Assembly: GCA_002269645.1 (NCBI GenBank)
Contig: NIVC01003627.1
Location: 1 to 33,429 of the forward strand
Reading direction: 5' to 3'
Origin: Macrostomum lignano
Lineage: Eukaryota
Length of the DNA stretch: 33,429 nucleotides
The position numbers and the translations under genes were made by a program. The notes under the pieces were generated by a model. It had not been told where the DNA came from, ran no database searches, and was given only the letters and a program-made list of their open reading frames with translations. Positions 4,254 to 33,048 of this stretch are shown one piece after another. Positions within the stretch are counted from its first letter, which is position 1. Each line of letters opens with the position of its first letter.

Positions 4254-7200
4254 CTGCAATTGTTGATAGAGCGCTTTAGTTTGGCAATAGAATCATCATA
4301 ATGAATGTCGGTGTACATGTAGGTTGCAACTTGCAACTCTTCAACCGGGGTTGCACCGAGAAAGCAGCGTATTTACAAGTACGAAATAGTTGCTGTGTAA
4401 GAAACAGCTTAGCGACCTTCCTTTGTATGTGAAGTCTTTCGCTAGACATATATGTACAGTGCTAAATTCCCACATTGGTAACAATTTAATTTTAATGTGT
4501 GATTTTAAGTTCAAAATGCGTCACACACCTACCGTATAGAAACTACAGTGGCGTACGCAGGAGTTTTACATTGTAAGTACATAGGAGGGGGTTGTGCAAC
4601 CCCAAGGGGCTTCAATACTTGGTGTCTTTGTGAGCACCCCTGCCTCATGGTGGGCGTCCCTGTCTTTTGGTGGGCGTTCCTGTCTCTTGGTTGGCGCCCC
4701 TGTCTCTTGGTGGGCGCCCCTGTCTTTTGGTGGGCGTCCCTCTCTCTGGGCGGGCGCCACTGTCTCTTGAGTTAGCGCGTTTCTTAGGCCTTTACGTTAC
4801 TGTCCTAATAACCAGTACTTAAATTCCCATTCACATTACTCACACACAGTTCGGGTCGCTAACATGAAATAAAAATTCCAAACGTAGTGTCGTTCATACG
4901 ACTTTTCGTCGTCGTGATATTTCAGTCTAATTGAGAGGCCAGTGTGATATTATTCGCGAAAAACAACCAGCCAAAAACTCACTCGAATCACCAGACGGAC
5001 TCGCTTCGGCTTGCCGTAATAAGACGGCAAGAAAGTGACGGTGAACGGCAGGCCGTCCGTGCCGTGCGGCGGCAGCTCGCCCGACTGTGGCTCAACGTGG
5101 AAGTCGCCAGAGTCGTGGTTCTCCTCGAAGTAGGCTCGGAACTTCACTGGGTGACTGCATGGGGAAAAGCAGGACAATAATTATTAACTTCAATGAAACA
5201 AAATTTTCGTAGGTAATAGTCATTCAAGCCCATTTAACTAATGAGCTCAGGAGAAGAGGAGATGCAGCAGAGTTTGTATAACTCAACTAATAGCGGTTAC
5301 AGCGTGAGGGTACTTGAGTGGCGACCCCCTCCCCCTGAAATCCTTGGACTAAATAGCCGTTCGCAGCCTTCAGATGCGCCGCGTAATAGCTGCGGTTGAG
5401 CTGTCGGTTGCACATCTGCCCAATTAGAGCAGGTGTAATCAATTTTGATTAGCAGAGCTTGACTTTTCGCTAAAATTTACATGTGGTTCTATTCCCGTGG
5501 TTCAAATCCAAGCGCAGCCATCTTAACTTGTGCGATAGAGACCGCTAGCTCAGCTCAGGGGCCAGAGATGGACATGACTATCGATTGTCATCTTAACTTG
5601 TGCGATAGAGACCGCTAGCTCAGCTCAGGGGCCAGAGATGGACATGACTATCGATTGTCATCTTAACTTGTGCGATAGAGACCGCTAGCTCAGCTCAGGG
5701 GCCAGAGATGGACATGACTATCGATTGTCATCTTAACTTGTGCGATAGAGACCGCTAGCTCAGCTCAGGAGCCAGCGATGGACATGACTATCGATTGTCA
5801 TCTTAACTTGTGCGATAGAGACCGCTAGCTCAGCTCAGGAGCCAGCGATGGACATGACTATCGATTGTCATCTTAACTAAAAATTGAGATTCGCAGAATC
5901 TGTTCATATGGATAACTGGTCACCCAGAACTCACAGTTCCTTGCTAGTCAGTCGGAACATCACTTTACTAGCTCTGTCCAATCCAGCCGCGTTAATAGTG
6001 ATGACGTCATCCGGTTCGGGATCCGTGCTCTCCACCGTGAGCGGATAGCGCCAAAAACCGCCAGCGTTAGACTTGATTACCAGGTGCGTCTTGACTCGGA
6101 AGGTTTTGTACGGCTGCAGCCGGAGCGCGAAGGTGAGCACCACCATGCCGGTGCGAGAGTCGCGCACCTGGCGGAGCAGTTCAAGCTTCACGCTCTGCGA
6201 CAACAATCCCGCCAAACTGTCGTCCAGAGACACCAGGCCAAAGGTGAACGGCTCAGGCACGTCGGCGGCTTCTTCGACACCAGCTGGGAGGGCTGGCTGG
6301 TTGCCAGCCGGAGTTCGAGTCCTTGCGCGGATCAGCGTCTGCAAGGAAGGGTATGCAAGCGTTGAATAGGACTACTATTTAGTGCGAGCTATACAGTAGA
6401 AGATTACCATGCACTTAGAATCGGCTAGAGGCTTATTCTCCGTCCGAAAATACGTTGGACTCATCGCATTAAGCGACAATTGGCCGTACGAATACGAATA
6501 AACTAAGCAAAAACTGGATTTGAGGACTCTTCCCTCTCTCCCCTCTTTCCTCCCTGTGCCTTAGATCTCGCCCTCTTTTTTGACGTCGCTTTGACGAATA
6601 AAAACAGAGTTTTAGCTTAGCTTAGCTCAGTTTGATATCAATCATAAATAGATAAGCCTAGCAGACACTGAGCGAGGATTACTTCGTAATGCAACATCTG
6701 TGTCATCCTAAGGAGGAGGAGGAGGAGGAGGAGGAGGAGGAGGAGGAGGATGAGGAGGAGGAGGAGGATTAGTTCTAGGAGCTTCCAGAGGTCAGGGGGC
6801 TCACCTGCGGCGCCCCCGGGGTCGGAGGCCAGGAGGGAGGAGCCAAACCTCCAGCCGGGAGGAGGGAGGACGGAGGAGGCCGGACGACACCGCGGCCGGC
6901 ACCTCCGGCGGCGGGCACCTCCGGCCGGTCCGCTTTGTTCTCCGGCACGCCGACAACGCGGAATCGCCAGCGAATTTCGGCGATGCCACCGCTGTCGGAT
7001 CGCGGCAGTGCTTTCGGCTCGTCCGGGCAATAATGCCAGCCTTTGCCGTCGCGTCGGCGCATGATCACCACGCAGACGGCCTCGTGCTGTTGCATGTTCT
7101 CGGGCGCGAAGCTGACAGGAATGTCCAATCGAGCCTTGGGTTCCAGGCGGATTTTCTTGCAGTGCTTCAACAGCAGGCAGAACGGGGAGTTCTCGAGCTC

Positions 7201-10200
7201 TTTGATGCCGTCGTTGGTTGACTTGCCGCTGTCTGTCAGCAGGATGTCGCACATGACGGGCACTCCAGCGGATTGTGGAACGGAATAATCAGCGTGGAAT
7301 TGCGCCGGCTGGAGCCGTGATGGCGACGGATTCTGGGCCGAGCGGCATCAGGCCTGAGCCGTTCTTCGAAGATCACTCTTTGGTTTGTCTGTAGCATGTC
7401 GGTAGTAAAGTTGTGGAAATTGCATAAACTTTTGTGTGTAAAAAAATCGAGTCTGCATCAAGTCTCAATGCATAGTGCGAGTATAGTCATCTGAAACGCT
7501 TAGCTAAAGCAATAGAATTTGGTAGGTAAGTCTTTAATAATGTGGTGTTGTGATCTAATGTATTGGCTCGTACTGTACTTTTTCACCTCCCCTGTCCCTT
7601 TCGTGCCCACTCATGTTGAGCCCCTCCTCCACTTTAGCGATGTTAGCCTCCTCCACCCTTCCACATAAAAAGTCAAATATATAACGTTATTCGTGGTTGC
7701 GTGAGGCCGCCTAGATGATTGTTGGCCGTATAGTGTGCCAAATAGACACCAAATAAATCCCGGCTTTGTTCTTGAGCTTAATGCTCTTTAACGAAGACTT
7801 AGCTTCATTGTCGCATCAACTTCAAACAAGTCTCTCGAAACATGATAGACAAACCGGCGAACTCACCGGAGTGAAACGTGATGCGACAGGCGTGATCGGC
7901 AAATCCCAAATCCGATGGCGTGAACCGCAGGTTCAGCGTGACGGATCCGCCCGCCGGGATGTGGACCTCGCTGTCGGTAATTTCCAGGCCGAAATTGTTG
8001 GCGTTTGACAGTTGCGGTCTGAGCACGATTGGCGCGGAGCTGGGATTCTCAAGCGTCATCTCCTGGCAGACGTGCTGGCCTAGCTCGCACTCCATCGGCT
8101 CCAGCACGGTGAGCGGAGGCGGAGTGGCGTGCAAGTTGAGCTCGTACCAGAATTCACCAGCCTCACTATTAAAGAAGATTACAGAGCCGATTGTATCCTC
8201 AACCAGGGCTGGGGAGAAGGCCAGGCGGTAGGTCACTTCCTGCAATTGGTGAGGTCAACATTTCATGGAATAAAACTTCTCTGGTTGCCACTCCAGTTAA
8301 TGACTACGTTATTATCAAGCTAAAAGTGTTCTATTCCTAATAATTTAGTAGTCCCTGGTGTCGACGCCTCTTACCTCGGCCGGCGCCAAACGCAGCACTT
8401 TTTCGCCGCTGAGGGACTCGCCGCGAATTTCTGCGTCCAACTCGATCTCCTTGTCGGTCAGGGGATTCCTGACGGTGAATTCCACTTCGCAGGTTCGATA
8501 GCACGGGCATGTGACGTCGAGACGGCCCATTGGCTCTCCCGGAGCCACGCTGAGCTCCATGCTGTACCAAACTCGGTGCTCAGTGCTCGGATTGTCGTCG
8601 ACTGGTGGCAGCTCTTCGCCATCGGAGTCGTAGTCGACTAGGCGGTCCTTGTCGGCTACGAAAGCAATTACGCCTGGTGACAAGTGGTACAGTGTTTTTA
8701 GCAATAGTGAAGGTTTTTATCACATGACAGTGGTCGCTAAATGTAAACTAAATGTAAATTAAAAATAAGAGCGGAATGAATGAGCTTCATTTTGACAAAG
8801 TCATGGCATCATGTCTAGTCTATTTACTCTTGCATTAAATTCATTGTTCAGTGTGCCAAAGCGAAAATGTCGTTTGTCGTTGATCACTCTGGAGCAATAT
8901 TTTACATTGGAATAGCTGAATGCTAACAATTCAAATAAAGTAACCAACCAATATGCAGATTTACATGGATTAATTCTCGCTCATAATCTTGTTAACTTAG
9001 CAAGTAGCAGCGCTCTGTTTGAATAAGGATAAACTTGATGAGCAAATAACTAGCTAATGGAATCAAATAAAGCTCATAGAAGGCAAGGTTGAGTTGATTG
9101 GGATATCTGCCGGTAGAACTGACTGAACAGAATCAGGCCCACCATTGCTTGAAAATGAAGCACTTCTTTTAGGTTGGACCAGCTTCAGCTACTGGCAGCT
9201 GGACGCCCAAGCCTGAGAACGCTCACAACGACATCGGTAGCTTCGTAAACGAGAGGCAGTGGCCGCTTCTTATCAAGTGTCTGCTATCAGATGACGATAC
9301 AGCTCTGCGCGGCTTCGCTGATCGGCTGGGAGATGATGCATGGCGCAAGTTCCTGAAGAGCTGGGACACAACAAGCAAGATGCGTCACTGCGGCCAAGAA
9401 TATCGGCGCACTCAGTTTGGCAATTTCGTCGTACCGAGAACTCACCCGTACCCAACCAACGTATTCCTGATGGCCATCATGTTTAACGCAAGGCGCTGCT
9501 GCCAGCTAATTAAGCATTCGGCTTCAGATTTGGACCTTGCCGAAATCACCGAGTTCGATTTTAATGGCTATCACGTCCTCTTCCTTGGACTAGACGTCAT
9601 CTGGCCGGTCGACGCACTGGAGCATCTTAACAACGAGATGGATTACATGCGCTTCTTCCTGGCCGAGTTGTTTACGTCAGACCAGGTGGATCGAATGTCT
9701 CATGCTATGAACTGCATTGGCATGCGACCGCTGGATTGGGGCGTATTCCGCGGCAAAGTTCTTGTGGTTGAGAAATTAATGTACCTGTCGCATACTCTGG
9801 ACAGTAAGGCCAAAGTCGCCGGAGTGATGGAGCATGTTCAGGTGGACCTGTCATTCTCTGTTAGCACCTCGCCGACGAGAAGCCTCACTGCGCTGTCCAT
9901 CATGAACGATCTGTACGGAGAGACCAACCTAGCGAATCTCAAAACCATCGGTATTTTCCGCCGACCTTTGCTAATCGCCCCATGGATTGATGCGCTGTTC
10001 CGGCGCAACACCTGGCTCCTAGTTGTGTACTTCGTTGAAAGGATTCTGCACTGCAGCCTGACGCTTATCTTCTTTGACTACGAGGTTGGCGACTACATGG
10101 TTGAGAGGTGCAACAATAGCAATGGACAGCGATTACCGACAGGATTTCTGGTGATCGTTGGCTACAGTTTGTTTGCAAGCACCTGGCAGGCTGTCATTAG

Positions 10201-13200
10201 TGTGCTGGGCGAGAGACGAAAATTGAAGTACCGGCAATCAAATAACTACCCGTCCTTTTTTCGGACAGGCCTGAATAGCGCACTGCGCTGGCAGGTTCCC
10301 TATGTAACATCCGCAATCTTGGCTATTGTAATTATCTTTTTGGGTATCAGTCCGGAAGCGGTATGCAAGTCTATCGGAGCTGATAGACTACGCAGCTTCA
10401 TGGGCTGCATCATGCTCTTTTACGTCTTGGCTAGCATTCTGTCTGTTCTGGTCTTAAGTCGCCTAGCAATGGTCATGTCCAAGTTTATCAATAGTTTCTA
10501 TAAGAGCTTTTCAATGTTCGCCAATTTCCTTCTCTGCTACATACTACTATTAAGCATTTTTGCCCGACTATTCCAAGCTTCTGGCCGTTTCGTATGGCCA
10601 ACCGACTCGACTTCAGGTAACTGCAGCGGCGGTACCCAGGCCGGCGCGAGACGGTTCAGCTTCGCCGAATCATTCTACCAGTCGTTTCTGCTGACGCTGA
10701 ACGTCTTGGACACCGGGCTTTTCCTACCACAGCCGGATCGAGTCGACCTGCTGGTGACACATTTCTTCTTCGTTCTTCTCGTGCCCACTCTGTTCATCAA
10801 CTTCGTCACCGGCCTGCTGTCATCGGTGGTCAGCGAAACCATGGACAACGACGTAGAAGCCAAGTACCTGTTGAAGTTGAACTTCTGCGAGTACGCCGAG
10901 ACCAGCTACTTCTGGCTCTACCAGCTAGTGAATCGGTTGCGAGGTCGCGAATCTCGTCTGGTTATTTATCTGTGCATGCCGTTGCACCTAAACAGCAAGT
11001 CTATGAAAGTCATCAAAGAGGTTCTGTAGGTGTTCTGTAGATTTTCTTTTAACTTTTCATTTTTTGTAAGTTTGCTGTCAAGAATAGTTGTAGACGGATA
11101 AACTGTACTTATAACATCACAGATAGAAACCTTCTGAAACTCTTATTTTTTACCATTGACGCACTATAAGTTTTGGTAGAATTCATTCTATTATAGTGTC
11201 TTATTTTTCCAATTATAGTCTTTTACTAGTATACAAAATTAGTTACCTCCAATATTTTTTCATCTGTGTCAGCGATGAATATTTATTCCACTTTTGATAG
11301 ATACGGTAAAAATATACCATACTTACCATCAAATTTGCCTCTCTTGTTCGGCGCAATGACGATTGTGTACTCAACCTGCCTTCCCGGCAGTACCGTCACT
11401 TCTTTCTTGCCGCCAACAAATGACAGATTGCTCTCCACCTGATAGAGCAGCTTCCGCTTGGAATTGTTTGGCACCAGCACCACTCGGGTGATTGACTCTC
11501 CAACCTGGCAGTCGAACACCAGATGGTCCAACGCTAGCGGCTTGCGACCGATGCCGCCAAGGACGTAGCAGTGCTCCGTGCCGTCGTCCAAATTAGTTAG
11601 CAGCAGCCGACCGGTGGCTTCGCCTTCGTGCGTCGGCTTAAACGTCAACGGATAGCTGGTGGTTTTGTACGCTTTGGCCAGCAGGTAGTCCGGCCCGTGG
11701 AAGTTGACGCCGTGCATCTCTGCTTTCAGCCGCCAATCGTCCTTAGTCTGGTTTATCACGGGAATGTTCTGCAGGACGGCTTGATTGACGGGACTTTCGA
11801 ATTGCAGCTCGGCCGAGAAGCCCTCCGGAATGACGATGCATTCGACGCGGAATAGCCTGACATCGTCGTTGGCTTTCAAGATAATCGTCACCGGGTAGAC
11901 GCCCGGTCGCTTCGGACGAAACTCCAACGGCAGGTCGAAAGTTGTGACAGTCGGGTCTGAGGGAATTTCAGGGACGGATTATCGAGTTTTATAAACAAAT
12001 GTTCGTAGTTATCAGAAGAGTGAAGTACAAGCCAAGCTTGAATGATCTGTATGGGTGTTCTTATAATTCTTATCCGGACCAAGACTGCCCTAAATCGGCT
12101 CATTCGACGATCAAATACCACTCAAGATCATGCATTCAGCTATGCATTCACCGGCAGTAAAATAGATCAATAAATAGATTTACCTTTCTTCAACGAATTA
12201 TCAGTGCTCCTAGGATGCGGAATGCTGATCACGGATGGAGCACGGAAGTGATGAGAGTCCAGCTCCACTTGAAAGTCGATTGTCTCCTTGCTGAACTGGA
12301 ACTTGCGCTGTAAATAAATAAAAAAGCTAATTTTAGATGCATCGAAAGTAGATTTTGAGTAACAAAGCAGTATTAAGATACTGAAAAAGAACTGCTAAAT
12401 ACCCTTTCAATCGAGCTGTTAGTCTTCTCCAGTTTCTTGCCATCAACGCCAACAGCGCTCAGCATTTCCATGGCCTTCTCCACGAGGGTTCCAGACTCAA
12501 GCGTGCCCGTCACTCGACGCCGTTGCACCTCCTTGAGGCTGAGATGCTGCTGTGCTGCCTGGAGCAGTGCTTTCTCTTTGTATTCGTTAATTAGAGGAAT
12601 TTTTAGCACCTCCTTGACCTCCTTGTTGGCTTCGGTGCGCCAGTACACGATGGAGTGATCGTGTACAACGCTGCTCTGACCGCGGCCTGCGAGAATGCGT
12701 TTGCGGGAAGGTAAACCTCTAATTAACTGTTTTTGAGGTAGGTAGGTTTGATCCAGCGAGTAAGGAAGCCGGAAAACTGACAAATGCGTAAATTAAAGTT
12801 ACCATCATAATTCCTGTTAACTCACTGTGTGATTTGATAAACTGAAATAGTCCCTACTAAAAGTAGCAACCAGTGAACGTACAAACTTAAGGAGATTCAA
12901 ATAAATTAAAACACAATAGTCCCTACTAAAAGTAGCAACCAGTGAACGTACAAACTTAAGGAGATTCAAATAAATTAAAACACAATGATAACTGTACTAC
13001 AAAATGTACTACAGAGGAGTATGTGTCAATCATTCCTGTCAGAAAAATTACCGGACAATATTGTAAATTTTTGTCTGCTTTATACTATCAATAGTGCCAC
13101 TATGAGAAACAGAAAACAAAGACTCACTAGCTGCAACAGCGCTGCTGATTCGAACGGTCTTTGTCGGCGGCGCACCCGGCGTTGCGTTGGCCTCCTCCAT

Positions 13201-16200: not shown

Positions 16201-19200
16201 AATTGCGACTCACCGATAAAACAGTCCTTCCCGTTCCAGGTGATAGTTCTCATCCACTAGGCCATCGGAGCTGCTCTCCGTTAGGGCATGATCCGGCCAA
16301 CGGGTTTTGCCGGTCTTGCCAACCATGCCGGGAACGTGCGGACCCGACTGCCCAGTGGCTTTGCTACTCGACGCGGGATTGTTCACCGCGCCGTCGCGTG
16401 GCGTGTTGGATGCAGCCGACTCTGTCAGGGTCTCCTCGTAGGAGGTGCTGGAGTCTTCAAAATTGGAGCTGGTCGCTGTGGTGCTCGGCCTGCTCGATGC
16501 AGCTACCAGGCCCGACAGATCCTCGGCTCGACAGGCGACCATCTGCGGCTCGCCAGTTTCAGTTGCTGGCAGTTGCTGAGCAGCTCGACGACCTTCGAGT
16601 AGTTTTCCTTGCTCAGTCACGATGTGATAGTCTTCTCGATGCTTCAAAACGAACGGGTAGAGTGTCAGAAGGCAGTTATCGGCGGTGGCGGAGACGGGAA
16701 GTCGGGTCTGGTTGCCAAAGCTGTCCTGGAAGAGGATCTCCTTGCTGATCGATACCGGCGTGCTGGCCTCGAACGTCAGGCGGCACCTGAGCTCGATCAG
16801 CTGCGCCAACGAAGCGTCACTTCCGCCACCGTTCGCGTCAGGATCTTTTGTGGCCGGGAAAATATCCGGTCCGCGACCGTCGATGTATTCTAGGCGGAGC
16901 GGTTTGATCGGTGAACCGTCGTCGGCTTCGACCTGCGGCAAGGTGAATTCTAGCCGACTGGGCGCAGCGTAGTTGGCAGCCAGTATTGAGAACTGCACGG
17001 AGATGGCCGAGTGCAGCGGGCACGGCGTCAGGGTGAGTGCCGGCGGAACGAAAGTGATGCTAGGCCAGGTGAGCTCGCCTCGCAGGGTCAGGTGATCGTA
17101 GGGGAACTGCCAGTCGTCGTTGATAACCACAGGTAGACGGGCTTTAAATTGGCCTGGGCTCCTTGGTGAGAACTGCACGGTCAGGGTGACTGTGGCTGCG
17201 GGCTCGAGACGGCCGAAAAGGCGACGTCCAGATTCGCTGCTCGCCTCCTCGGGCGCAGCTTCGGTACCCTCGATTGGAGTCAGGCTGAAGCAGGAGTCTC
17301 GGAGGGCCTTCTGACTGTTTGGCAGGTCTACAGCCCATGTGATGGCTGAGTCTCCCGTGTTCTCCAGTGTCAGCAGCTGCAGACGGTTATTCGCCGGTGT
17401 CGCCTGGTTCAACGGCGGTGGCGTCGGCGACACCTGCGCGTCCAGTTGATCCTGGAGCGCCTCAGGCGCCAGCTGGAAGGCGAACTCGCGACGCGAGAGG
17501 CGCAGCACCGGACGCAGGGCGATGCCTTTGACCAGCTTGCGGGGCGTCTGCACCACGGGCACGTGAGGCGTCCAGCCGACGCGACCGCTGCTGCTACTCG
17601 TGGCCGAGTCGATGCGAGACATGCTGATGCCGTCCTTCACGGTGGGCGCTGGCGACGGAGGCACCTACGGTTTGCATGGTTTGGTGTATTTTATAATGAA
17701 TCTTCCAACTACGATACACTATCTACAACTTAAGCGGGATAGTAAGGTCGTACAAATTCTGTTTTAATATATACAAGCTCGCAGTACAAACTTAACTTTG
17801 TACGAATTAGCAACTTACTGGAGTAGCGGCAGGACTCGGCGCTCGAGTGTTGTTGATTACCACCGGCATCAGAAAGCTGTAAGACGCCACTTCCTTGGGC
17901 CGGAAAGTGAGCACAGCTTTTAAAGTCTCCTCAGGACGGAGCGTCACCGTGTGAACTCCAGGATTAGCCAGGTCCTCTGGGCTCGCCCGACCGCCGAAGT
18001 CGAGCGAGAAGTCCGGATACCGTTTCAAATCGAACTCGAGTCGCGAGTCTGTCTGCGTTTGATTGACCAGCTCGAAGCTGATCGACTTGCTCGCGCCAAC
18101 GTACACGCCATCAAAGTTGAACTCTTTTAACGGAATGTCGACGCACGGCGACAGGATTGTGCCGCCCATGCGCAGCTCCAGGTCGCGCCAGCCGCGGATG
18201 GCGACCCGAGTGCCGCAGTCGAACTTTGACACAGCCGACGGAGTAAACGAGATTCGAATCTCTTTCTGTCCGCCGACTGGGACAACGCCGCTTAGCGGCT
18301 CGAGCTCCATGCCAGGCCAGGGCTTGCTGTTGATCACGTGAAAGTACGCGTGGTTCTGAGAATTATTCACCAGGACAGCCTTCTTCACCGTGGTCATGTT
18401 GAGCGGCACCGAGCCAAACATCACGCGACGATTGACGAACTGTACGTTTGTGGGGCCAAACTTGGCCACGCACTTTAAATTCAAATCGTTTCCGCCCTCG
18501 ACGTGCAATCGGAAGTAGCCTTCGTCTGGCGCGTTGAACGACGGCCGAAAGACAACCTCGCAGTCGATGTCTTTGAAAGCTTCGACCACGCCGGCTCGGG
18601 GCCTGATTGAGAAGGCGGTGTGCTGGCGCTCCTTCAGCACCGGCTCCCAGCTGAACTCGGCCGGGTGGTTCAGCCGGTTGTACAGGGTGATGACGCCCCG
18701 GATTCCAGCCTCAGCTGGTTGGCCTTCGCATGGCACGACCTCGAGCTCTTGGGTGCTCAGCTCAAGCTGTACGGGCACAACTTCGGCCAGAGCGATCACG
18801 TGATTTCGATAGTTACCGTTGATCACATAGCTGACGTTTCGTTGGAATCGGCCCTGGAGGGCGGACTCAAAGATTAGCGGCACCAGAGCCTTGGACTTGG
18901 GCGGCACCACCTGGCTGAGCGGGCTGGAGTGGCGCAGCTCGCGGCAGTCAATCTCCACCACCAGGTGGATGCTCGTCTCAAGGTTGTTCATCACTATCAG
19001 CTCGCGGGTGACCACGGAACGAAGGCAGACGACGCCGAAATCGATGGTGCCGGGGGTGATGACAACCTGGTGTAGCTCTTGCGGCCGCAGCAGCATGCGG
19101 CACTCCTCCTTCTCCTTCTGGCTCATCGGCACCGCGCCCAGGCCGTCCTTGGCCGTCTGGTTGGCCGCTGTCTCCTTGACATCCTGGATCTCCTTGGTGC

Positions 19201-22200
19201 TGAGCAGTTGGAACACTTTGTTTGGCGGCTCAGGAGCTGCAAAACACCGAATTAAATAGCAGGAGGTTACTGCTTTGCTATTTTCTGCTTTTAATGAGCT
19301 GGTCAGCAAAAAAATAAAAAACAGGTGAAACATCCGCGCTAAAGTCAGTAGAGGGTAATTTCGGGAATTAAAAAAACTTTTCTGTTGACAAGCTGACCCA
19401 CGATATTGTGCAACATTGATTAAAGGTAAACAAACTTCTCATATGGTTTGTGACAATTTCCTGACCATTGTAAACCATTTTCAAGAGTCCCTTCTGGTGA
19501 CAAATACAACAAATAGCATTGTGTTTAGGTGAAATCTCGATACATATTCCGTGAAAAAGTTATGCGCAGAGGGATGGATAAAATTTGAGTAAAAATAAAA
19601 AAATCCACAAAAGCCTAGATGAACCTCTAACCTGGCCTGACTGGATGATAATATGTGAACTTGGCATTCGCTGAAATGCGTTGAATTGATACAAAATCAC
19701 ATAGCTGAACTTTCATAGCTTTAAAACTGAATCTCATACCTACCCAACCGAATCTCATACCTACCCAACCGAATCTCATACCTACCCAACCGAATCTCAT
19801 AGCTACCCCTGGTACCCAACCGAATCTCATAGCTACCCAACCGAATCTCATAGCTACCCAACCGAATCTCATACCTACCTAACCGAATCTCATACCTACC
19901 CAACCTGAATCTCAGACCTACCTACCCAACCGAATCTCATACCTACCCAACCGAATCTCACCTAGCTACCCAACCGAATCTCATACCTACCCAACCGAAT
20001 CTCATACCTACCCAACCGAATCTCAGGCCTACCCCTACCCAACCGAATCTCATAGCTACCCAACCGAATCTCATACCTACCTAACCGAATCTCTTACCTA
20101 CCCAACCGAATCTCATACCTACCCAACCGAATCTCATACCTACCCAACCGAATCTCAGACCTACCCAACCGAATCTCATACCTACCCAACCGAATCTCAT
20201 ACCTACCCAACCGAATCATACCTACCCAACCGAATCTCAGACCTACCCAACCGAATCTCATACCTACCCAACCGAATCTCATACCTACCCAACCGAATCT
20301 CATACCTACCCAACCGAATCTCATACCTACCCTAACCGAATCTCATACCTACCCAACCGAATCTCATACCTACCTAACCGAATCTCATACCTACCCAACC
20401 GAATCTCAGACCTACCCAACCGAATCTCATACCTACCCAACCGAATCTCAGCCTACCCAACCGAATCTCATAGCTACCCAACCGAATCTCATACCTACCC
20501 AACCGAATCTCATACCTACCCAACCGAATCTCATACCTACCTAACCGAATCTCATACCTACCCAACCGAATCTCATACCTACCTCAACCGAATCTCATAC
20601 CTATAACCGAATCTCAGACCTACCCAACCGAATCTCATACCTACCCAACCGAATCTCAACCCCTATAACCGCATCTCAGACCTACCTAACCGAATCTCAT
20701 ACCTACCCAACCGAATCTCATACCTACCCAACCGAATCTCATACCTACCTAACCGAATCTCATACCTACCTAACCGAATCTACCTAACCGAATCTCATAC
20801 CTACCTAACCGAATCTCATACCTAACTAACCGAATCTCATACCCACCTAAGTTAAGCTCATACCTACCTAACTGAGTCTCATAGCTAATAAATGGAATCT
20901 CACCCGACCTAAACAAATCCCATTGCCATTCAACGCTTCCCTCGAACTCACGAGGCGTATCAGGCCGCAGGTCTTCAAGTCCCAGCTTGACAGGCCTCAT
21001 CCCCATGGCGGGAATCATGCCCATATCTCTGTCATTCTCGAACCGCTTTAATCGCCGGTCCCGCTGAGACACAATGAGATTCTCCGTTCGCTTTCTCTGG
21101 CTATCGGCGTAGCCCTGCTTGTGCTGACGGACGCGCTCTACTTCGGAGTCTTCGTAGGCATAGTCCGGGTCTACGAAGTTGTGTCGCTTCACTCGGGTGA
21201 ACAGGGTGCTGCAGTTGGTATGAGGAGGGATGGTTAGGTGCAACTGATCCACTACTGAAGTTTAGTTTATGAAGTTTAGACTGCTGGGAATATACGAGGC
21301 GTACTGTACTTCGGATAGACAGTCCAAGGGGAACTTTAACGACCCAGCGCCAATCCTCACCAATAGTCCACGTGCCGCTCCGACGGTCGCAGGCTGGCGG
21401 CTCGATCATTCGGGAAGGCGATGCGCGCTTGTTTCCGACGCTTACCGTCGCCGCCGCTGCCCTCGTCGGCCGAGACGGCGTGCCGATGCAGCCGGGCATT
21501 CGTGTGGGCCACCAGCGCCGCCAGCGGAGGCTGCACCGGCCGTTCGTTTAGCTCGTCGAATCGGGTGTCGGTGCACAGGCCGACTTCGTTGGCCACCAGC
21601 GGGGTGATGCCGGGGTTGAAGCGACCGGCTGGCTGAGTGCCGAACACGCGACAGGAGCCGGAGAGGCGCATGAACACCTGTGACGGGCGGGAGTGACAAG
21701 CGAGGTTGAGATTTGGTTAAAGTCGAGGTGACAGCCGCAAGAGGTTGACAGATAATCCAAGAGCTACCTTGTCTACTAAAAAACACGGCTAATAGTAGTA
21801 GCTTTCATTTTTCACGCCAATTCAAACTGAAGTTTGGAAAATGTTTCTGCACGGTTCTACTATGTGAGCTCACCGAATGGATAACATCGAGTCGTCTCGT
21901 TAGCGGATCTTGCCTATCATCGGCCACCTCGCCGAGTATGCAGATCTCCAATTGGACGTCGAAGTTGCCAAACTGCCTCGGGCAGAAGGTGACGCTGACT
22001 GGCAGCTCGCGGCCTGGCTCAATTTGACCTCGCTCTGGTCTGGCATTGAAGTGGGCGATCTTGCGGAACGCGAACAGCACCGGTAGGCCGTCCTCGGATT
22101 GGTTGGCCAGCGTGAAAGCCGCATCGGCCGGGTTGTTCAGCTGGACAGCGCCGAAGTTCACCTCCGGCTTGGGCGAGACTTGCAGAAGGATTGGCAGGGC

Positions 22201-25200
22201 GGTGCCGGTGAGAGCGACCTCCAGCTGAGTTCGATGCGAATCGGGTGAGGCCGAGTCTGGAGATTTGCGGTTTTAATGAATAATTTTTTATTTTAATAGT
22301 GTCTTATCATGTTATTAATCGATAATAGTGTTTGCAGTTTCGGTGATAGCAAAACTAGCACATCGTGACTATCGCACGTGTATGTGAATCAATGCTTCAG
22401 AGTGCCTTCAAAGCTACGCAATCAGCAATGTTTCAGATTGTCTTCAAAGCTACGCAATCAGCAATGCTTCAGAGTGTCTTTAAAGCTACGCAATGATTAA
22501 TGCTTCAGATTGTCTTCAACGCAATCATCAATGCTTCAGAGGGTCTTCAACACAATCATCAATGCTTCAGAGTGTCTTCAAAGCTACGCAATCAGCAATG
22601 CTTGCAATTCGTCAGTTCGGGGTCAAGAAGACTAGTTGAAAGTGTCAAATAACATGTCCTCACCAGTCTGCGTCCCTACAAGCTGAATGTACATAAACAG
22701 CGCAAAATCCTGCTTTGGCGGGCTGTCTTCTGTTGTGTGAAACGACCTCTTAGATTTGTACCAACGAGGACTGAATCTAAAACAAACCAGAGCTTTCTGG
22801 TATGGCGCGATCGTGCCTTGATTGGGAATCATGCAGACCAGAGAGGTCAGCGGGTTCGTGCACTCTTTGGCCTCGGCCAGGTTTGCTGACTTGTTCACCG
22901 GACCCTGCGAGTTGTTGAAAGTGAAGAATTTGCCTTCTTTACATGAAATTTTCTGTAGTTACCTCAGTAGAAGGACTATGTTTTTTTCAATAAGCGTGAA
23001 TCTTGCCTCTTTACTCCACCAATCTTTGAGAATCTGCCTCTCCGCTCCCCCTGTCCTTGAGAATCTGCCTCTCCGCTCCCTCTGTCCTTGAGAATCTGCC
23101 TCTCCGCTCCCCTCCTGTCCTTGAGAATCTGCCTCTCCGCTCCCCCTGTCCTTGAGAATCTGCCTCTCCGCTCCCCCTGTCCTTGAGAATCTGGCTCTCC
23201 GCCCCCCTCCTGTCCTTGAGAATCTGGCTCTCCGCCCCCCTCCTGTCCTTGAGAATCTGCCTCTCCGCTCCCCCTGTCCTTGAGAATCTGCCTCTCCGCT
23301 CCCCCTGTCCTTGAGAATCTGCCTCTCCGCTCCCCCTGTCCTTGAGAATCTGCTTCTCCGCTCCTGTCCTTGAGAATCTGGCTCTCCGCCCCCCTCCTGT
23401 CCTTGAGAATCTGCCTCTCTGCTCCCTATGCTTGAGAATCTGCCACTCCGCTCCATGTCCTTGAGAATCTGTCTCTCTGCTCCCTGTCCTTGAGAATCTG
23501 CCTCTCTGCTCCCTGTGCTTGAGAATCTGCCACTCCGCTCCATGTCCTTGAGAATCTGCCTCTCTGCTCCCTGTCCTTGAGAATCTGCCTCTCTACTCCC
23601 TGTCCTTGAGAATCTGCCTCTCTGCTCCCTGTCCTTGAGAATCTGCCTCTCTACTCCCTGTCCTTGAGAATCTGCCTCTCTGCTCCCTGTCCTTGAGAAT
23701 CTGCCTCTCTACTCCCTGTCCTTGAGAATCTGCCTCTCCGCTCCATGTCCTTGAGAATCTGCCTCTCTACTCCCTGTCCTTGAGAATCTGCCTCTCTGCT
23801 CCCTGTCCTTGAGAATCTGCCTCTCTGCTCCCTATCCTTGAGAATCTACCTCTCTGCTCCCTGTCCTTGAGAATCTACCTCTCTGCTCCCTGTCCTTGAG
23901 AATCTGCCTCTCTGCTCCCTGTCCTTGAGAATCTGCCTCTCTACTCCCTGTCCTTGAGAATCTGCCTCCTAGTTTTCTCAATCCTTGAGAATCTGCCTCC
24001 TAGTTTTCTCAATCCTTGAGAATCCGTCATTTTTCACACTCCACACTCACAGACTCCTGTCCGATGGCGTTCTCCTCCAGAATGGACACAAAGCTGACAG
24101 GCTCTGGTGCATTGTTGAAGAGCACTGCCGCCTCAATTTTGTCTGTCCCGTAGAACGCGGAGCCGAAATGCACGCATGGCATCGGCTCCCCGGTGGCCGG
24201 GCTCAGTAGCTCCAGTTGGCGTTCGACTATTTCGCCGAACACGGCAATTTTCTGTGGCTCCGTGCGACCCTCAAGGACGGCGACGACTTCTTCGTTGAAT
24301 TTGCCGGGCTCTTTGGTGATGTAATCGAACTGCAATGCAGTTGGAGAAAGGGTGATGTTTACGGCATGAAACGCTGTATTACTGTCACAACAGGTAAAAC
24401 TATCTTAATGTGGAAGCGCAATCTGCTGCCTGTAGAACTGTAACCCAAACCATTCCAAAATCAGTTAGTTGCTATGGTAAGCCTCTCACCCGGACAGGCA
24501 GCACTGATTTCGGCGGTATCGATCCGTGCGGCGGCAGAATCGACAATGGCCGGCTGCCCGAATATTCGAATCGAAACTCGCCAGGCCTGGAGCCGCGATT
24601 GTACAGCTTCACGTTGGTGGTGACTACCTTGTTTGCCACAACTACTACGCCAAAGCTGACACTGTCTGAGATCTCCAGCACCGGCTGGCGAGGCATCCCC
24701 TGGACTGGTACCTGCGTGTTTTTTAAAACGTAAGATAAAAAACATAAATGGGTTCCTAAAAAACATGTCTTAAGAAGAGCCTTTAGTTAAACGCCTTTAG
24801 TCTAATAGGCTTCTATGTACCATGTGATTTTTTTCAATTTTTTACTCTAAAAGTGAAGACACGACATTGAGGCCAGAGTCCTTTGGTTGATTCATTTAAC
24901 ACGGACATCTTTAAGGGGTAAGAGAAACGAGTCCTCTGTGATGCTCTCTGGCTGGCCGAGAAACTTAATAGTCTAAGTGAAATACTTTATTAATTTTCGA
25001 TCAGTGGAACATTGGGACCTCGGAACGATGAAAAGTCAAATAGTACGGTGCTTTAGGATGGTTAAGAATTTCCATTTGGAAGCAGCTGTCAGCAATTAGG
25101 AGATTTAAACTGTAAAAAATATATCGACTTGCTGCGCGTAACAGATAAACTCTCATACCGGAATAACTTCGCCATCAACTGTGACGATGAGGCGATCACT

Positions 25201-27255: not shown

Positions 27256-27943
27256 GGCAGTGCTTATCCCCACGGTACCGTAGGAATAATTTCTATCTTA
27301 TTCCAACGGTACTGTGTGAATAATTTTCTGCTTATCCGCACGGCACACTGAGGAGATAGCTGCCCTATCTTCTACATATGCCGTGCGAATAATTTTCTGC
27401 TTATCCGCATGGCACACTGACGAGATAGCTGCCCTATCTTCTACATATGCCGTGTTGTGGGAAGTTTAGTACATACAATTTGAGTGCAGTATAACAACAT
27501 AACTTGGCTTGAACATTTGTTGTAAAGAAATAAAGATTTTTTCTATGAGAAAGAATTTTTTTGTGTAGTAACAAATGATTTAAATTAAATTAACTCTAAG
27601 AATTGTTTATTATTTAAATTTTTAGCAAAGTCTAATCTGATCTCGCCGTGATTTATATAGTCCATTGCCGCTTCCGTAGAATTTTACTACTCATGTGAAT
27701 TCGCATGATTCATATTCATATTGCGGACAAGCAGAAAATTATTCGCACGGCATATGTAGAAGATGGGCAGCTATCTCGTCAGTGTGCCATGCGGATAAGC
27801 AGAAAATTATTCGCACGGCATATGTAGAAGATAGGGCAGCTATCTTGTCAGTGTGCCGTGCGGATAAGCAGAAAATTATTCGCACGGTACCGTTGGAATA
27901 AGACAGAAATTATTCCTACGGTACTGTGGGGATAAGCAGTGCC
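27256..27943. mobile_element. Non-autonomous Mutator/Foldback-like DNA transposon, 688 bp
   Basis: TIRs of about 200 bp (27256-27454 and 27746-27943) starting GGCAGTGCTTATCCCCAC and ending GTGGGGATAAGCAGTGCC, with internal 68-69-bp subrepeats; perfect 9-bp direct flanks TTCATAGAA at 27247-27255 and 27944-27952; no ORF of note inside. Confidence 0.85.
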
Positions 27944-31091: not shown

Positions 31092-31882
31092 ATGGGATCG
31101 ACAACATCCCTGCCCACCCTTGGCCGGGGAAATCCGCACAGTAATTACACAGCCGCTAAGCGCAGTGCATCTTCTGCTGGAACCGACAAGCAGCATAAAA
31201 AGCAGCAATCTTCCTCCTCTAATGGCGCTAATTCTCTTGCCAGATCGAAGAGCTGTAGCAATGCCAATTTTGGCAAGCAGCAAAAGCAACATTTGCTTCA
31301 ACAGCAGCAGCAGAATGGCGGCTTGGAATCCACAGTGGAGCCGGCAACCAATGGTAGCCAATGGCACAAGGTGTCCAATGGTAACTATGCCCCAGAGCCG
31401 GAGAAAACTCTTGCATCAACAACTTCTTTGCAGAAGCAAAAGCAACAGCAGAGATTGAAAAATCTTCAGCGACCGCCAGCAAACGGCGGCCTAGTTGGCC
31501 TGAACAACCTCGGCAATACCTGCTATATGAATAGCATTCTGCAGTGCCTGAGTCACACCGAGCCTCTGTTGCGTCACTTCGTGCTGGAGCGACGCTTTCA
31601 ACCAAGCGCCGGGCGAAACGGCAGCGGTCTGGCCAAGGCCTACGCCAATCTCATGCTGCGAATGTGGGCGGCGTCTGCCTCCCCAACTGGCGCTGACTGC
31701 ACCAGCCCGACCGAGCTGAAGCAGTGCGTAGCGCAATACGCGCCGAGGTTCCGCGGCTACAGTCAGCAGGATGCGCAAGAGTTCCTGCGCTATTTGCTAG
31801 AGGGACTTCACGAGGACCTGAATCTGGTCTCGGTCCGACCTAAGCTGCCGCCTGTTGATTATGAGCATCTGGACTTGCTTTC
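31092..31882 (+). CDS. USP2/USP21-like ubiquitin-specific protease, exon with S/Q-rich N-terminus, Cys box and QQDAQEF box
   Basis: GLVGLNNLGNTCYMNSILQCLSHT (catalytic Cys present) and FRGYSQQDAQEFLRYLLEGLHEDLN; donor TC|GTGAGT. An in-frame acceptor at 31065 means the true start may be upstream. Confidence 0.9.
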
Positions 31883-31925
31883 GTGAGTGCTCTGGACTGA
31901 GTTCTTCCACCCGCTTTGTTCTCCA

Positions 31926-32459
31926 GTTGCTGGGCCAGCCTCCTTGATCCTTAGTTGCCGGGCCAGCCTCCCAGATCCTCAGTTGCTGGGCCAGCCTCAT
32001 TGATCCTTAGTTGCCGGGCCAGCCTCCCAGATCCTCAGTTGCTGGGCCAGCCTCCAGATCCTCAGTTGCTGGGCCAGCCTCCCAGATCCTCAGTTGCTAG
32101 GCCAGCCTCCCAGATCCTCAGTTGCTGGGCCAGCCTCCCAGATCCTCAGTTGCTGGGCCAGCCTCCCAGATCCTCAGTTGCTAGGCCAGTCTCCCAGATC
32201 CTTAGTTGCTAGGCCAGCCTCCCAGATCCTCAGTTGCTGGGCCAGCCTCCCAGATCCTCAGTTGCTAGGCCAGTCTCCCAGATCCTTAGTTGCTAGGCCA
32301 GCCTCCCAGATCCTCAGTTGCTAGGCCAGTCTCCCAGATCCTTAGTTGCTGGGCCAGCCTCCCAGATCCTCAGTTGCTAGGCCAGCCTCCCAGATCCTCA
32401 GTTGCTGGGCCAGCCTCCCAGATCCTCAGTTGCTGGGCCAGCCTCCCAGATCCTCAGTT
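31926..32459. repeat. 28-bp minisatellite (GTTGCTGGGCCAGCCTCCCAGATCCTCA), about 19 copies, in the USP intron
   Basis: Direct inspection. Confidence 0.98.
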
Positions 32460-32999: not shown

Positions 33000-33048
33000 G
33001 TGAGTTTGCGAGTATTAAATGCTTTTTAATAAGTGGCTTATGATTTTA

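What the first reader, a model, noticed from the sequence alone, without database searches (positions are those of the whole stretch)
9173..11029. Highly divergent TRPV-like channel gene nested antisense inside an intron of the ciliary gene CFAP47
Seen: CFAP47 intron 16 (11326-8674) is mostly filled by a 549-codon stop-free ORF on the opposite strand with no internal introns, whereas both neighbouring genes are intron-rich. It has about six hydrophobic segments. Established: TRPV channels have ankyrin repeats, 6 TM segments, a pore helix and an S6 motif L.NMLIA; the invertebrate TRPVs OSM-9/OCR and Inactive/Nanchung act in sensory cilia. Inference: this is a lineage-specific TRPV-derived channel, possibly retroposed or an expanded paralogue, sitting inside a motile-cilium gene. 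Nesting could mean co-regulation or mutual transcriptional exclusion. It is too divergent to assign to a named orthologue.
Basis: partly seen in the sequence, partly recalled or inferred. Interest (0 to 1): 0.72.

Follow-up and report, generated by a model that had tools for sequence, protein, structure and literature searches.

The report
Divergent TRPV-like channel gene in CFAP47 intron
A flatworm (Macrostomum) gene with no internal introns, sitting backwards inside an intron of the cilium gene CFAP47, encodes a very divergent relative of the TRPV sensory ion channels that ordinary domain searches miss; it belongs to a small, uncharacterised family.

Summary
A stop-free frame of 618 codons (9173-11029, + strand; first ATG at 9380 gives 549 aa) fills 70% of a 2,653-bp CFAP47 intron (8674-11326, minus strand). 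The window is from Macrostomum lignano or a very close relative.

The TRPV reading is supported, but only by sensitive methods. Pfam, single-sequence PDB search and a word-indexed protein search found nothing. Exhaustive phmmer found 21 relatives. The closest are four M. lignano paralogues (24-33% identity). A family profile hits only TRPV channels at the top of the PDB list (TRPV3, E=1.8e-19). So does a profile that leaves out the Macrostomum sequences (TRPV5, 3.6e-18), and that profile scores the window protein at 180 bits. The AlphaFold model (pLDDT 81, pTM 0.80) matches TRPV1/2/3/5/6 and Nanchung-Inactive (TM about 0.55).

Differences from TRPV: three ankyrin repeats rather than six, S6 motif reduced to its Asn, TRP-box Trp replaced by Tyr, filter LNVLD.

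Homology starts 49 codons upstream of the first ATG. The start codon is therefore probably supplied by the flatworm spliced leader (which ends in ATG) or by an unseen exon. Retroposition is unsupported, and the nesting is absent at the closest paralogue's locus. Expression and function are untested.

The parts
9173..11029 (+). Open reading frame of the TRPV-like gene: 618 sense codons plus TAG, with no internal intron.
   Evidence: Homology to the M. lignano paralogue P0001 runs over aa 21-609.
9171..9172 (+). Candidate 3' splice acceptor (cacttcttttAG|GTT) at the very start of the open frame. A spliced leader ending in ATG joined here would read in frame. This is inferred, not shown.
   Evidence: The SL sequence and acceptor motif come from PMC8629364. 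Other in-frame AGs exist at 9210, 9216, 9252 and 9258.
9173..9379 (+). The 69 codons upstream of the first ATG. They are homologous to the N-termini of the paralogues and so are probably translated.
   Evidence: BLASTP of these 69 aa alone: P0003 E=3e-7, P0001 E=1e-5, colinear. AF2 predicts helices at aa 29-62 with pLDDT up to 95.
9380..9382 (+). It is the fallback initiator if there is no SL or upstream exon.
9449..9790 (+). Three ankyrin-like repeats (aa 93-206), aligned with TRPV ankyrin repeats 4-6.
   Evidence: The profile-to-TRPV alignments start at TRPV3 residue 255-260, TRPV5 164 and TRPV6 156. AF2 predicts helix pairs at 97-116, 132-166 and 186-205. Assigning these start points to repeat 4 rests on my knowledge of the TRPV repeat boundaries.
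9803..10006 (+). Linker beta-hairpin, linker helices and pre-S1 helix (aa 211-278), including W271.
   Evidence: AF2 strands 211-216 and 219-225, helices 234-278. Aligned to the TRPV3 linker region.
10010..10459 (+). S1-S4 helical bundle (aa 280-429).
   Evidence: Hydropathy and AF2 helices.
10478..10846 (+). Pore domain (aa 436-558): S5 with F452 and F463, pore helix with F505 and L509, filter LNVLD with D513, and S6 with H530, F533 and N543.
10850..10906 (+). TRP-helix equivalent (aa 560-578). Y565 sits where TRPV channels have the TRP-box Trp.
   Evidence: AF2 helix 560-578. The family consensus aligns to TRPV3 IWRLQRA.
10961..10981 (+). C-terminal beta-strand (aa 597-603, VIYLCMP), the equivalent of the TRPV C-terminal strand that joins the linker sheet.
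   Evidence: AF2 strand 597-603. The family motif TVCxP aligns to TRPV3 FRLCLRI.
8674..11326 (-). Host intron of CFAP47, 2,653 bp, GT...AG.
11327..11927 (-). CFAP47 exon upstream of the host intron, with Ig-like/ASH-type domains. Its upper boundary is approximate.
8345..8673 (-). CFAP47 exon downstream of the host intron. Its lower boundary is approximate.

Best explanation
The ORF is a real protein-coding gene of Macrostomum (lignano or a very close relative). It encodes one subunit of a tetrameric six-transmembrane cation channel of the TRPV type.

The protein belongs to a small, very divergent TRPV-related family. The family has several paralogues in Macrostomum and unnamed members in other, unidentified eukaryotes. 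The predicted protein keeps the TRPV body plan: ankyrin repeats 4-6, linker beta-sheet, pre-S1 helix, S1-S4 bundle, S5-pore helix-S6, a TRP-like helix and the C-terminal strand. It also keeps the pore-lining hallmarks: the S5 and pore-helix aromatic residues, an acidic filter residue (D513) and the S6 Asn (N543). It has lost ankyrin repeats 1-3, the filter glycines and the TRP-box Trp.

Inferred steps:
- It forms a cation-permeable, probably sensory, channel with gating and ligand properties unlike those of the characterised TRPVs.
- It is transcribed on the plus strand from within the CFAP47 intron.
- Because homology starts 49 codons before the first ATG, the mRNA most likely gets its initiator AUG from the flatworm spliced leader, trans-spliced at an AG near the start of the open frame (9171-9172 is the best candidate).
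- The nesting in CFAP47 is an accident of where this paralogue landed, not a functional coupling.
For: Real gene:
- A 618-codon open frame, about 3e-11 expected by chance.
- Codon-position GC like the host exons and unlike the surrounding intron.

Homology chain:
- phmmer against 1.84 billion representatives gives 21 hits, the best being M. lignano P0001 at 4e-81.
- Profile A3, built without the window or the Macrostomum paralogues, scores the window protein at 180 bits over aa 35-609. The same profile hits TRPV5, V3, V6, V2 and V1 at 3.6e-18 to 1e-10.
- The full family profile A1 hits TRPV3 at 1.8e-19 from residue 260 to 736.

Fold:
- AF2 pLDDT 81.3, pTM 0.80.
- Foldseek top 49 hits are all TRPV1/2/3/5/6 or Nanchung-Inactive, probability 1.00, TM about 0.55, about 550 aligned columns.

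Conserved residues: F452, F505, L509, H530 and N543 are at least 90% conserved in the family, and the filter Asp is invariant in A3.

Selection in the family: the homeologous copies P0001 and P0022 differ by 12 synonymous and 9 nonsynonymous changes, dN/dS 0.21, binomial P=5e-4.

Translation upstream of the first ATG: the 69 upstream codons alone match P0003 (3e-7) and P0001 (1e-5).

Spliced-leader hypothesis:
- The M. lignano SL ends in ATG and about 30% of its genes are trans-spliced (PMC8629364).
- Use of the flatworm SL AUG as initiator methionine was reported by Cheng et al. 2006, as cited in PMC12582326.
- No GT[AG]AG donor lies on the plus strand between 8675 and 9172.

Organism:
- 61/62 aa identity to an M. 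lignano protein.
- A minisatellite shared at 92% identity with an M. lignano contig.
Against: - No expression data of any kind could be consulted.
- The exact protein is not in the 15-billion-protein collection. No representative above 33% identity exists. So no annotation pipeline in those sources has called this gene.
- The window protein alone, and a profile of the Macrostomum subclade alone, do not reach any TRP entry. The link depends on intermediate sequences and on the predicted fold.
- Pore and gate residues differ from conducting TRPVs: no GxG in the filter, Thr at the I679-equivalent gate position, Ser at the G563-equivalent, Tyr for the TRP-box Trp. Conduction is therefore not guaranteed.
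- The dN/dS was measured on a paralogue, not on this gene.
- There is no genomic initiator ATG at the homologous N-terminus.
- The acceptor TTTTAG is not the commonest M. lignano trans-splice motif (YTNCAG), and four other in-frame AGs lie within 90 nt.
Confidence: 0.8

Rival explanations
1. The ORF is a young, silent or decaying paralogue: an unexpressed copy or early pseudogene. It still has an intact frame but has lost its start codon and promoter.
For: - There is no in-frame ATG where the paralogue P0001 has its genomic ATG.
- The protein is absent from all annotation-derived collections searched.
- It lies in an intron, a common landing place for dead copies.
Against: - It is 33% identical to its nearest paralogue, so it is old. 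Yet it keeps 618 codons without a stop or frameshift, and the frame ends colinear with its relatives.
- Its codon-position GC is still coding-like.
- Family-conserved residues are retained, and AF2 is confident over most of the chain.
- The flatworm SL can supply the AUG.
Confidence: 0.12
2. It is a retrogene: a processed mRNA copy of an intron-containing TRPV-like parent, inserted into the CFAP47 intron.
For: - The ORF has no intron, whereas the paralogue P0001 has one 101-bp intron in the S2-S3 loop.
- A 9-bp direct repeat, GGATAAACT, lies 138 bp upstream of the frame and 67 bp downstream of the stop.
Against: - There is no poly(A) tract before the 3' repeat copy, and a 9-bp two-copy repeat is within chance.
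- The five other family loci examined are also single-exon, so being intronless may be the family's ancestral state and the P0001 intron a gain. Prokaryote-style gene calling on metagenome contigs does bias that sample.
- There is no parent above 33% identity, so any retroposition signature would have eroded and cannot be tested.
Confidence: 0.08
3. Translation starts at ATG 9380, giving the 549-aa protein. The upstream 69 codons would be 5' UTR that is open by descent only.
For: - ATG 9380 is the first genomic in-frame ATG.
- AF2 is poorly confident for aa 67-91, around this ATG, so a shorter protein could still fold.
- GC periodicity is weak in 9173-9379 (0.57/0.51/0.58).
Against: - The 69 upstream codons are stop-free and match the paralogues' N-termini on their own (E 3e-7 and 1e-5).
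- AF2 predicts helices there with pLDDT up to 95.
- GC drops sharply just upstream of 9173, next to a polypyrimidine-AG.
Confidence: 0.25
4. The protein has the TRPV fold but is not a plasma-membrane sensory cation channel. It could be a non-conducting modulatory subunit that co-assembles with paralogues, or an organellar channel.
For: - The filter glycines, the I679-equivalent gate residue, the G563-equivalent and the TRP-box Trp are all changed.
- The closest paralogue P0001 even lacks the filter Asp (LNIVN), which suggests subunit specialisation.
- Several paralogues exist in one genome.
Against: - D513 and N543 and the pore-helix and S5/S6 aromatic residues are kept.
- The filter Asp is invariant in the non-Macrostomum members.
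- Nothing in the sequence points to an organellar location.
Confidence: 0.2

Closest known systems
TRPV channels (vertebrate TRPV1-6; invertebrate OSM-9/OCR and Inactive/Nanchung)
   Same: - Family profiles match TRPV from ankyrin repeat 4 to the C-terminal strand (E 1.8e-19 and 3.6e-18).
- The predicted fold matches TRPV1/2/3/5/6 and Nanchung-Inactive best (TM about 0.55).
- Shared parts: linker beta-sheet plus C-terminal strand, pre-S1 Trp (W271), S5 Phe residues, pore-helix Phe (F505), acidic filter residue (D513), S6 aromatic residue (F533) and S6 Asn (N543), and a helix after S6.
   Different: - About three ankyrin repeats instead of six, with a roughly 90-aa N-terminus that does not align to TRPV.
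- Filter LNVLD instead of G(M/L)GD or TIID.
- S6 reads NFVTG instead of NMLIA.
- Tyr replaces the TRP-box Trp, and Ser replaces the S4-S5 Gly (TRPV1 G563).
- A family-invariant His (H530) at the outer end of S6.
- No Pfam family matches.
- The window protein and its Macrostomum subclade cannot reach TRPV by sequence alone.
- M. lignano is reported to have a canonical TRPV as well (PMC5196486), so this is not its TRPV orthologue.
TRPVL (TRPV-like family, described as sister to TRPV in cnidarians, annelids and molluscs) and the 'unclassified TRPV-related' channels reported in lophotrochozoans
   Same: - A TRPV-related lineage outside canonical TRPV, found in spiralian invertebrates.
- The literature notes unclassified channels near TRPV/TRPVL in abalone (PMC12980990; PMC9242649).
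   Different: - No TRPVL sequence could be obtained here, so membership is untested.
- None of the 20 hits whose source names were looked up (of 21 phmmer hits) is called TRPV or TRPVL. The only organism-named ones are Macrostomum proteins, plus one fragment labelled as a bacterial MAG.
M. lignano paralogues PAA64149.1 / PAA49257.1 (P0001/P0022), UniProt A0A1I8HKA1, A0A1I8HLH7 and A0A1I8J5T3
   Same: - Same family, with 24-33% identity colinear over the aligned length (three of them are partial models).
- P0001/P0022 are about the same size (623 aa against 618).
- The homeologous pair P0001/P0022 is under purifying selection (dN/dS 0.21).
   Different: - The P0001 locus lies between Arv1 and UGGT, not in CFAP47.
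- P0001 has a genomic ATG and one 101-bp intron.
- P0001 has Asn where the window protein has the filter Asp.
- They are annotated only as 'hypothetical', 'Ion_trans domain-containing' or 'G_PROTEIN_RECEP_F1_2 domain-containing'.

Membership tests
TRPV (vanilloid TRP channels) | Significant sequence or profile homology to TRPV channels across the cytosolic and transmembrane parts | tested here: met
   Met at the family level: A1 against PDB gives TRPV3 at 1.8e-19. A3, which excludes the window and Macrostomum sequences, gives TRPV5 at 3.6e-18 and scores the window protein at 180 bits. Not met by the window protein alone or by its subclade profile.
TRPV (vanilloid TRP channels) | TRPV subunit fold: ankyrin repeat domain, linker beta-sheet, pre-S1, S1-S4, S5-pore helix-S6, TRP helix, C-terminal strand | tested here: met
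   AF2 model pLDDT 81.3, pTM 0.80. Foldseek ranks 1-49 are all TRPV-family chains, E down to 6e-8, TM about 0.55. TRPA1 appears at rank 50 with TM 0.30. This is a predicted structure, not a solved one.
TRPV (vanilloid TRP channels) | N-terminal ankyrin repeat domain of six repeats | tested here: not met
   Alignments to TRPV begin at TRPV3 residue 255-260, TRPV5 164 and TRPV6 156, which is about repeat 4. Only three helix-pair repeats are predicted at aa 93-206. Three short helices (aa 29-62) precede them, followed by a low-confidence stretch.
TRPV (vanilloid TRP channels) | S6 motif LLNMLIA (Asn, then the Leu-Ile-Ala gate region) | tested here: not met
   The window reads LFINFVTG. N543 is kept. 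The L678-equivalent is Val, the I679-equivalent is Thr and the A680-equivalent is Gly. So the match is partial: the Asn only.
TRPV (vanilloid TRP channels) | TRP box with conserved Trp (IWKLQ) in the helix after S6 | tested here: not met
   The helix is present (aa 560-578), but the aligned residue is Y565 (EAKYLLKLN). The family consensus has no Trp there.
TRPV (vanilloid TRP channels) | Acidic residue in the selectivity filter after the pore helix | tested here: met
   D513 in LNVLD aligns with the Asp of TRPV3 GLGD. The Asp is invariant in A3. The flanking glycines are absent.
Group I TRP channels (12 'fingerprint' residues of Cabezas-Bratesco et al. 2022, PMC9242649) | [quoted passage not shown] | tested here: inconclusive
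   Mapped through the HMMER alignments to TRPV3 and my own TRPV1-to-TRPV3 equivalences.
- Kept: W271, F463, F505, F533, N543.
- Conservative changes: V545, G547, Y565.
- Changed: S436 (for Gly), T546 (for Ile).
- Ambiguous: the two S1 positions.
That is about 5 identical and 3 similar of 12. The paper reports 7-11 for accepted Group I TRPs.
TRPVL (TRPV-like family) | Phylogenetic placement with cnidarian and annelid TRPVL reference sequences (for example Nematostella XP_032222722.1, Capitella ELU06894.1) | not testable with these tools
   Only accession numbers could be found. No named TRPVL protein was found among the 20 phmmer hits whose source names were looked up.
Nested (intron-hosted, antisense) gene | The whole coding region lies inside one intron of a host gene, on the opposite strand | tested here: met
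   ORF 9173-11029 (+) lies inside the CFAP47 intron 8674-11326 (-), which has verified GT/AG ends and an in-frame exon junction. The transcript ends are unknown. If a cis exon exists upstream, it would lie outside this intron.
SL trans-spliced flatworm gene with SL-donated initiator AUG | An SL-bearing mRNA joined at an AG so that the terminal AUG of the SL is in frame with the ORF | not testable with these tools
   Only compatibility is shown. AG at 9171-9172 follows a pyrimidine tract, and SL ...TTGCATG|GTTGGA reads in frame. No transcript data were available.

The most novel reading that the evidence does not exclude
The window gene, its Macrostomum paralogues and the unnamed relatives from other eukaryotes may form a previously unclassified TRP subfamily. 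It would sit beside TRPV and TRPVL and be defined by:
- a three-repeat ankyrin stub;
- an LN(I/V)xD filter without glycines;
- an invariant His at the outer mouth of S6;
- a Trp-less TRP helix;
- mostly intronless genes.

Its gating (for example by protons or metals through the His/Asp ring) would be unlike any studied TRPV. In Macrostomum, at least this member would depend on the spliced leader for its start codon.
Probability: 0.3. Interest if true: 0.55.

Novelty: new variant of a known kind. Interest (0 to 1): 0.42.

Why it matters
TRP channels are the main polymodal sensors of animals, and lineage-specific expansions often mark new sensory abilities. This family shows that a TRPV-type channel can lose half its ankyrin domain, its filter glycines and its TRP-box Trp, and still stay under purifying selection (measured on a sister paralogue pair).

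The family escapes Pfam-based surveys, so counts of TRP channels in flatworms and probably other invertebrates are underestimates.

M. lignano is transparent, transgenic and open to RNAi, so function could be tested directly.

For annotators, the locus is a clean example of two traps: a gene hidden antisense in an intron, and a coding region without a genomic start codon in a trans-splicing organism.

The nesting in a cilium gene looks incidental. The closest paralogue lies elsewhere in the genome.

Tried and rejected
- **Pfam on the window protein and on 9 relatives.** No Ion_trans, TRP or ankyrin hit at E<=1.
- **phmmer of the window protein against PDB.** Only spurious histone H2B at E=0.035. 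Rejected as chance: a low score within a hydrophobic region.
- **Word-indexed protein search, with the protein and with alignment A1.** No hits. The index appears to be swamped by hydrophobic words.
- **Exact look-up of the 549-aa product.** Not on record.
- **Macrostomum-only profile (A2) against PDB.** No TRP hit, only ankyrin-repeat proteins at E about 0.7.
- **Retroposition.** Looked for a poly(A) tract and a target-site duplication. Found only a 9-bp repeat with no A-tract. Rejected.
- **A cis upstream start exon inside the intron.** No GT[AG]AG donor on the plus strand in 8675-9172. The nearest consensus donors lie antisense to CFAP47 exons, at 8109 and 8249.
- **SL RNA gene, tRNAs, Rfam families in the window.** None.
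- **A second copy of the gene in the window.** None.
- **Source organisms of the unnamed relatives.** Literature searches for their accessions (GCA_022702875.1, DRR639055, DRR639838, SAMN10622497, the ERZ records) found nothing useful.
- **TRPVL reference sequences from paper supplements.** Only accession numbers.
- **Synteny.** The P0001/P0022 loci are flanked by Arv1 and UGGT, so nesting in CFAP47 is not shared.

Full report
**1. What is in the sequence**

The plus-strand frame starting at 9173 is open for 618 codons and ends with TAG at 11027-11029. It is the longest open frame in the window. From the window's base composition, about 3e-11 such frames are expected by chance.

GC by codon position is 0.51/0.38/0.63. 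That is the same pattern as the neighbouring minus-strand exons. The DNA immediately upstream and downstream is 36% and 28% GC.

A hydropathy scan finds six hydrophobic segments, at aa 282-300, 326-344, 375-393, 410-428, 446-464 and 531-549. A long loop lies between the fifth and sixth.

**2. The host gene**

The minus-strand ORF blocks around the ORF carry the Pfam CFAP47 domain (PF24529, 3e-19), a CH domain and many ASH/Ig-like domains. Their database homologues are named CFAP47, CFA47 or CXorf22.

The joined exons read in frame as ...KRGKFDGVIAFVADKD. The ORF fills 70% of this 2,653-bp intron, on the opposite strand.

CFAP47 exons extend at least to 22179. By ORF blocks the host intron is about the eighth visible in the window.

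**3. Organism**

A 62-aa stretch of a CFAP47 exon is 61/62 identical to a Macrostomum lignano UniProt entry. A 28-bp minisatellite at 31924-32459 is 92% identical to an array on M. lignano contig NIVC01001778.1. The window is therefore from M. lignano or a very close relative.

**4. Is it a TRPV-like channel?**

Standard searches fail:
- Pfam gives nothing at E<=1.
- phmmer against PDB gives only a spurious histone match.
- The word-indexed search of 5.8 billion proteins gives nothing.

An exhaustive phmmer against 1.84 billion representatives found 21 relatives. Four are M. lignano paralogues, plus a near-identical homeologue of the best one found by cluster look-up. They are P0001/P0022 (623 aa, 33% identity, E=4e-81), P0002, P0003 and P0011. 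They are annotated only as 'hypothetical', 'Ion_trans domain-containing' or, for P0011, 'G_PROTEIN_RECEP_F1_2 domain-containing'. The rest come from metagenome and read-archive assemblies and one unannotated NCBI genome. None of the nine relatives scanned has a Pfam ion-channel hit.

Three profile searches against PDB give the following:
- The full family profile (A1) hits only TRPV channels in its top 60. TRPV3 scores 1.8e-19, aligned from residue 260 to 736. TRPV5, V2, V4 and V6 follow.
- To rule out circularity I built a profile without the window and without the Macrostomum paralogues (A3). It still hits TRPV5 (3.6e-18), V3, V6, V2 and V1. It scores the window protein at 180 bits over aa 35-609, against -1.6 bits for a shuffled control.
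- A profile of the Macrostomum subclade alone (A2) does not reach TRPV. This shows how far the subclade has drifted.

AlphaFold2 with alignment A1 gave a confident model (pLDDT 81.3, pTM 0.80). Foldseek against PDB returned TRPV1/2/3/5/6 and the insect Nanchung-Inactive complex for ranks 1-49. Probability was 1.00, TM about 0.55, with about 550 aligned columns. TRPA1 appeared at rank 50 with TM 0.30.

**5. Anatomy compared with TRPV**

Kept:
- Three ankyrin-like repeats (aa 93-206), aligned to TRPV repeats 4-6.
- The linker beta-hairpin (211-225) and the pre-S1 helix with W271.
- S1-S4.
- S5 with F452 and F463.
- The pore helix with F505 and L509.
- An acidic filter residue, D513.
- S6 with F533 and N543.
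- A helix after S6 (560-578).
- The C-terminal beta-strand (597-603, VIYLCMP), which in TRPVs completes the linker sheet.

Lost or changed:
- Ankyrin repeats 1-3.
- The filter glycines (LNVLD instead of GxGD).
- The S6 motif (NFVTG instead of NMLIA; only the Asn survives).
- The S4-S5 Gly (Ser here).
- The TRP-box Trp (Tyr here).

A His at the outer end of S6 (H530) is conserved across the family and has no TRPV counterpart.

Against the 12 'fingerprint' residues proposed for Group I TRPs (PMC9242649), I count about five identical and three conservative. This mapping uses the HMMER alignments plus my own TRPV1-to-TRPV3 equivalences and is approximate.

**6. Gene model**

Homology to P0001 begins at aa 21 of the open frame. 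The 69 codons upstream of the first ATG match the paralogues' N-termini on their own (E 3e-7 and 1e-5). AF2 predicts confident helices there. The coding region therefore starts before ATG 9380, yet there is no in-frame ATG between 9173 and 9380.

The frame opens right after cacttcttttAG (9171-9172), a plausible 3' splice site at the point where GC content jumps. No consensus donor (GT[AG]AG) lies on the plus strand in the upstream part of the intron.

M. lignano trans-splices about 30% of its genes to one 35-nt leader that ends in ...TTGCATG (PMC8629364). Use of the flatworm SL AUG as initiator methionine was reported by Cheng et al. 2006, as cited in PMC12582326. Joined at 9173, the leader's ATG is in frame.

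This is my preferred model, at roughly 40%, but it is inference only. Four other in-frame AGs lie within 90 nt. TTTTAG is not the top trans-splice motif (YTNCAG). A distant cis exon, or use of ATG 9380, remains possible.

**7. Origin and context**

The closest paralogue (P0001) and its homeologue (P0022) lie between Arv1 and UGGT, not in CFAP47. They carry one 101-bp intron in the S2-S3 loop that the window gene lacks.

The other five family loci I could read are single-exon. That sample is biased, because prokaryote-style gene calling on metagenome contigs favours intronless genes.

I found no poly(A) tract or credible target-site duplication. Retroposition is therefore unsupported and, given the age of the copy, no longer testable.

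The nesting is specific to this paralogue. Nothing here suggests functional coupling with CFAP47.

**8. Selection**

No close copy of the window gene was available. For the sister paralogue pair P0001/P0022 I computed 12 synonymous and 9 nonsynonymous differences by the Nei-Gojobori method. This gives dN/dS = 0.21, with binomial P=5e-4 against neutrality. The family is under constraint in Macrostomum. For the window gene itself, the intact 618-codon frame at 33% identity to its nearest relative argues the same, indirectly.

**9. Comparison with what is known, and novelty**

M. lignano is reported to have a canonical TRPV homologue (PMC5196486), so this is an additional, divergent lineage.

The literature recognises TRPVL as a sister family of TRPV in cnidarians, annelids and molluscs. 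It also notes unclassified TRPV-related channels in lophotrochozoans (PMC12980990, PMC9242649). I could not obtain TRPVL sequences, so whether this family is TRPVL, an offshoot of it, or a separate clade is open.

I rate it a new variant of a known kind. The fold and ancestry are TRPV-type, with a halved ankyrin domain and altered pore, gate and TRP-box residues. Interest is moderate: useful for TRP evolution and flatworm sensory biology, and a good annotation case. It is not a new kind of system.

**10. Verdict**

- Observation: confirmed.
- Interpretation: supported, apart from retroposition, the literal S6 motif, the ankyrin repeat count and the start of the coding region.
- Still untested: expression, channel activity and the SL-donated start codon.

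Noticed in passing
window 31924-32459; L001 13179-13592: A 28-bp minisatellite (19 copies) just downstream of a UCH/USP exon (31092-31886, +). It is 92% identical to an array on another M. lignano contig (NIVC01001778.1), so it is a dispersed, genus- or species-specific satellite family.
   Followed up: partly
window 19725-20887: A 21-bp minisatellite with about 55 copies, strongly strand-asymmetric (GC skew about -0.68). It lies between CFAP47 exons, in an intron of the host gene.
   Followed up: partly
window 23026-23999, 5519-5878, 417-805, 33044-33416: Further tandem arrays: 29 bp x 32 copies; 70 bp x 5 copies at 99% identity; (TATC)n of about 97 copies; 19 bp x 20 copies. The window is unusually rich in minisatellites.
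   Followed up: no
window 27261-27939: Two 69-bp-unit repeats (27314-27454 and 27722-27887) are reverse complements of each other, in an AT-rich stretch. This inverted-repeat structure could be a foldback or MITE-like element.
   Followed up: no
window 19049-19234 (-) versus UniProt A0A1I8F8Y4 (P0039): An M. lignano protein annotated as 'HP domain-containing' ends with 61/62 residues of a CFAP47 exon. It is probably a chimeric gene model that fuses an upstream gene to CFAP47.
   Followed up: partly
window 9027-9035 and 11096-11104: A 9-bp exact direct repeat (GGATAAACT) brackets the ORF. There is no poly(A) tract before the 3' copy, so I judged it a chance match rather than a target-site duplication.
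   Followed up: yes
L001 9979-10000 (M. lignano paralogue locus): A consensus trans-splice acceptor (CTACAG) lies 21 nt upstream of P0001's genomic ATG. An SL ATG joined there would also be in frame, with no stop before the annotated ATG. The family may commonly be SL trans-spliced.
   Followed up: no
P0013 (NCBI MEL7309700.1, 912-bp contig): A fragment of this eukaryotic channel family is deposited as a protein of a 'Pseudomonadota bacterium' MAG. This is most likely eukaryotic contamination of a metagenome bin.
   Followed up: no
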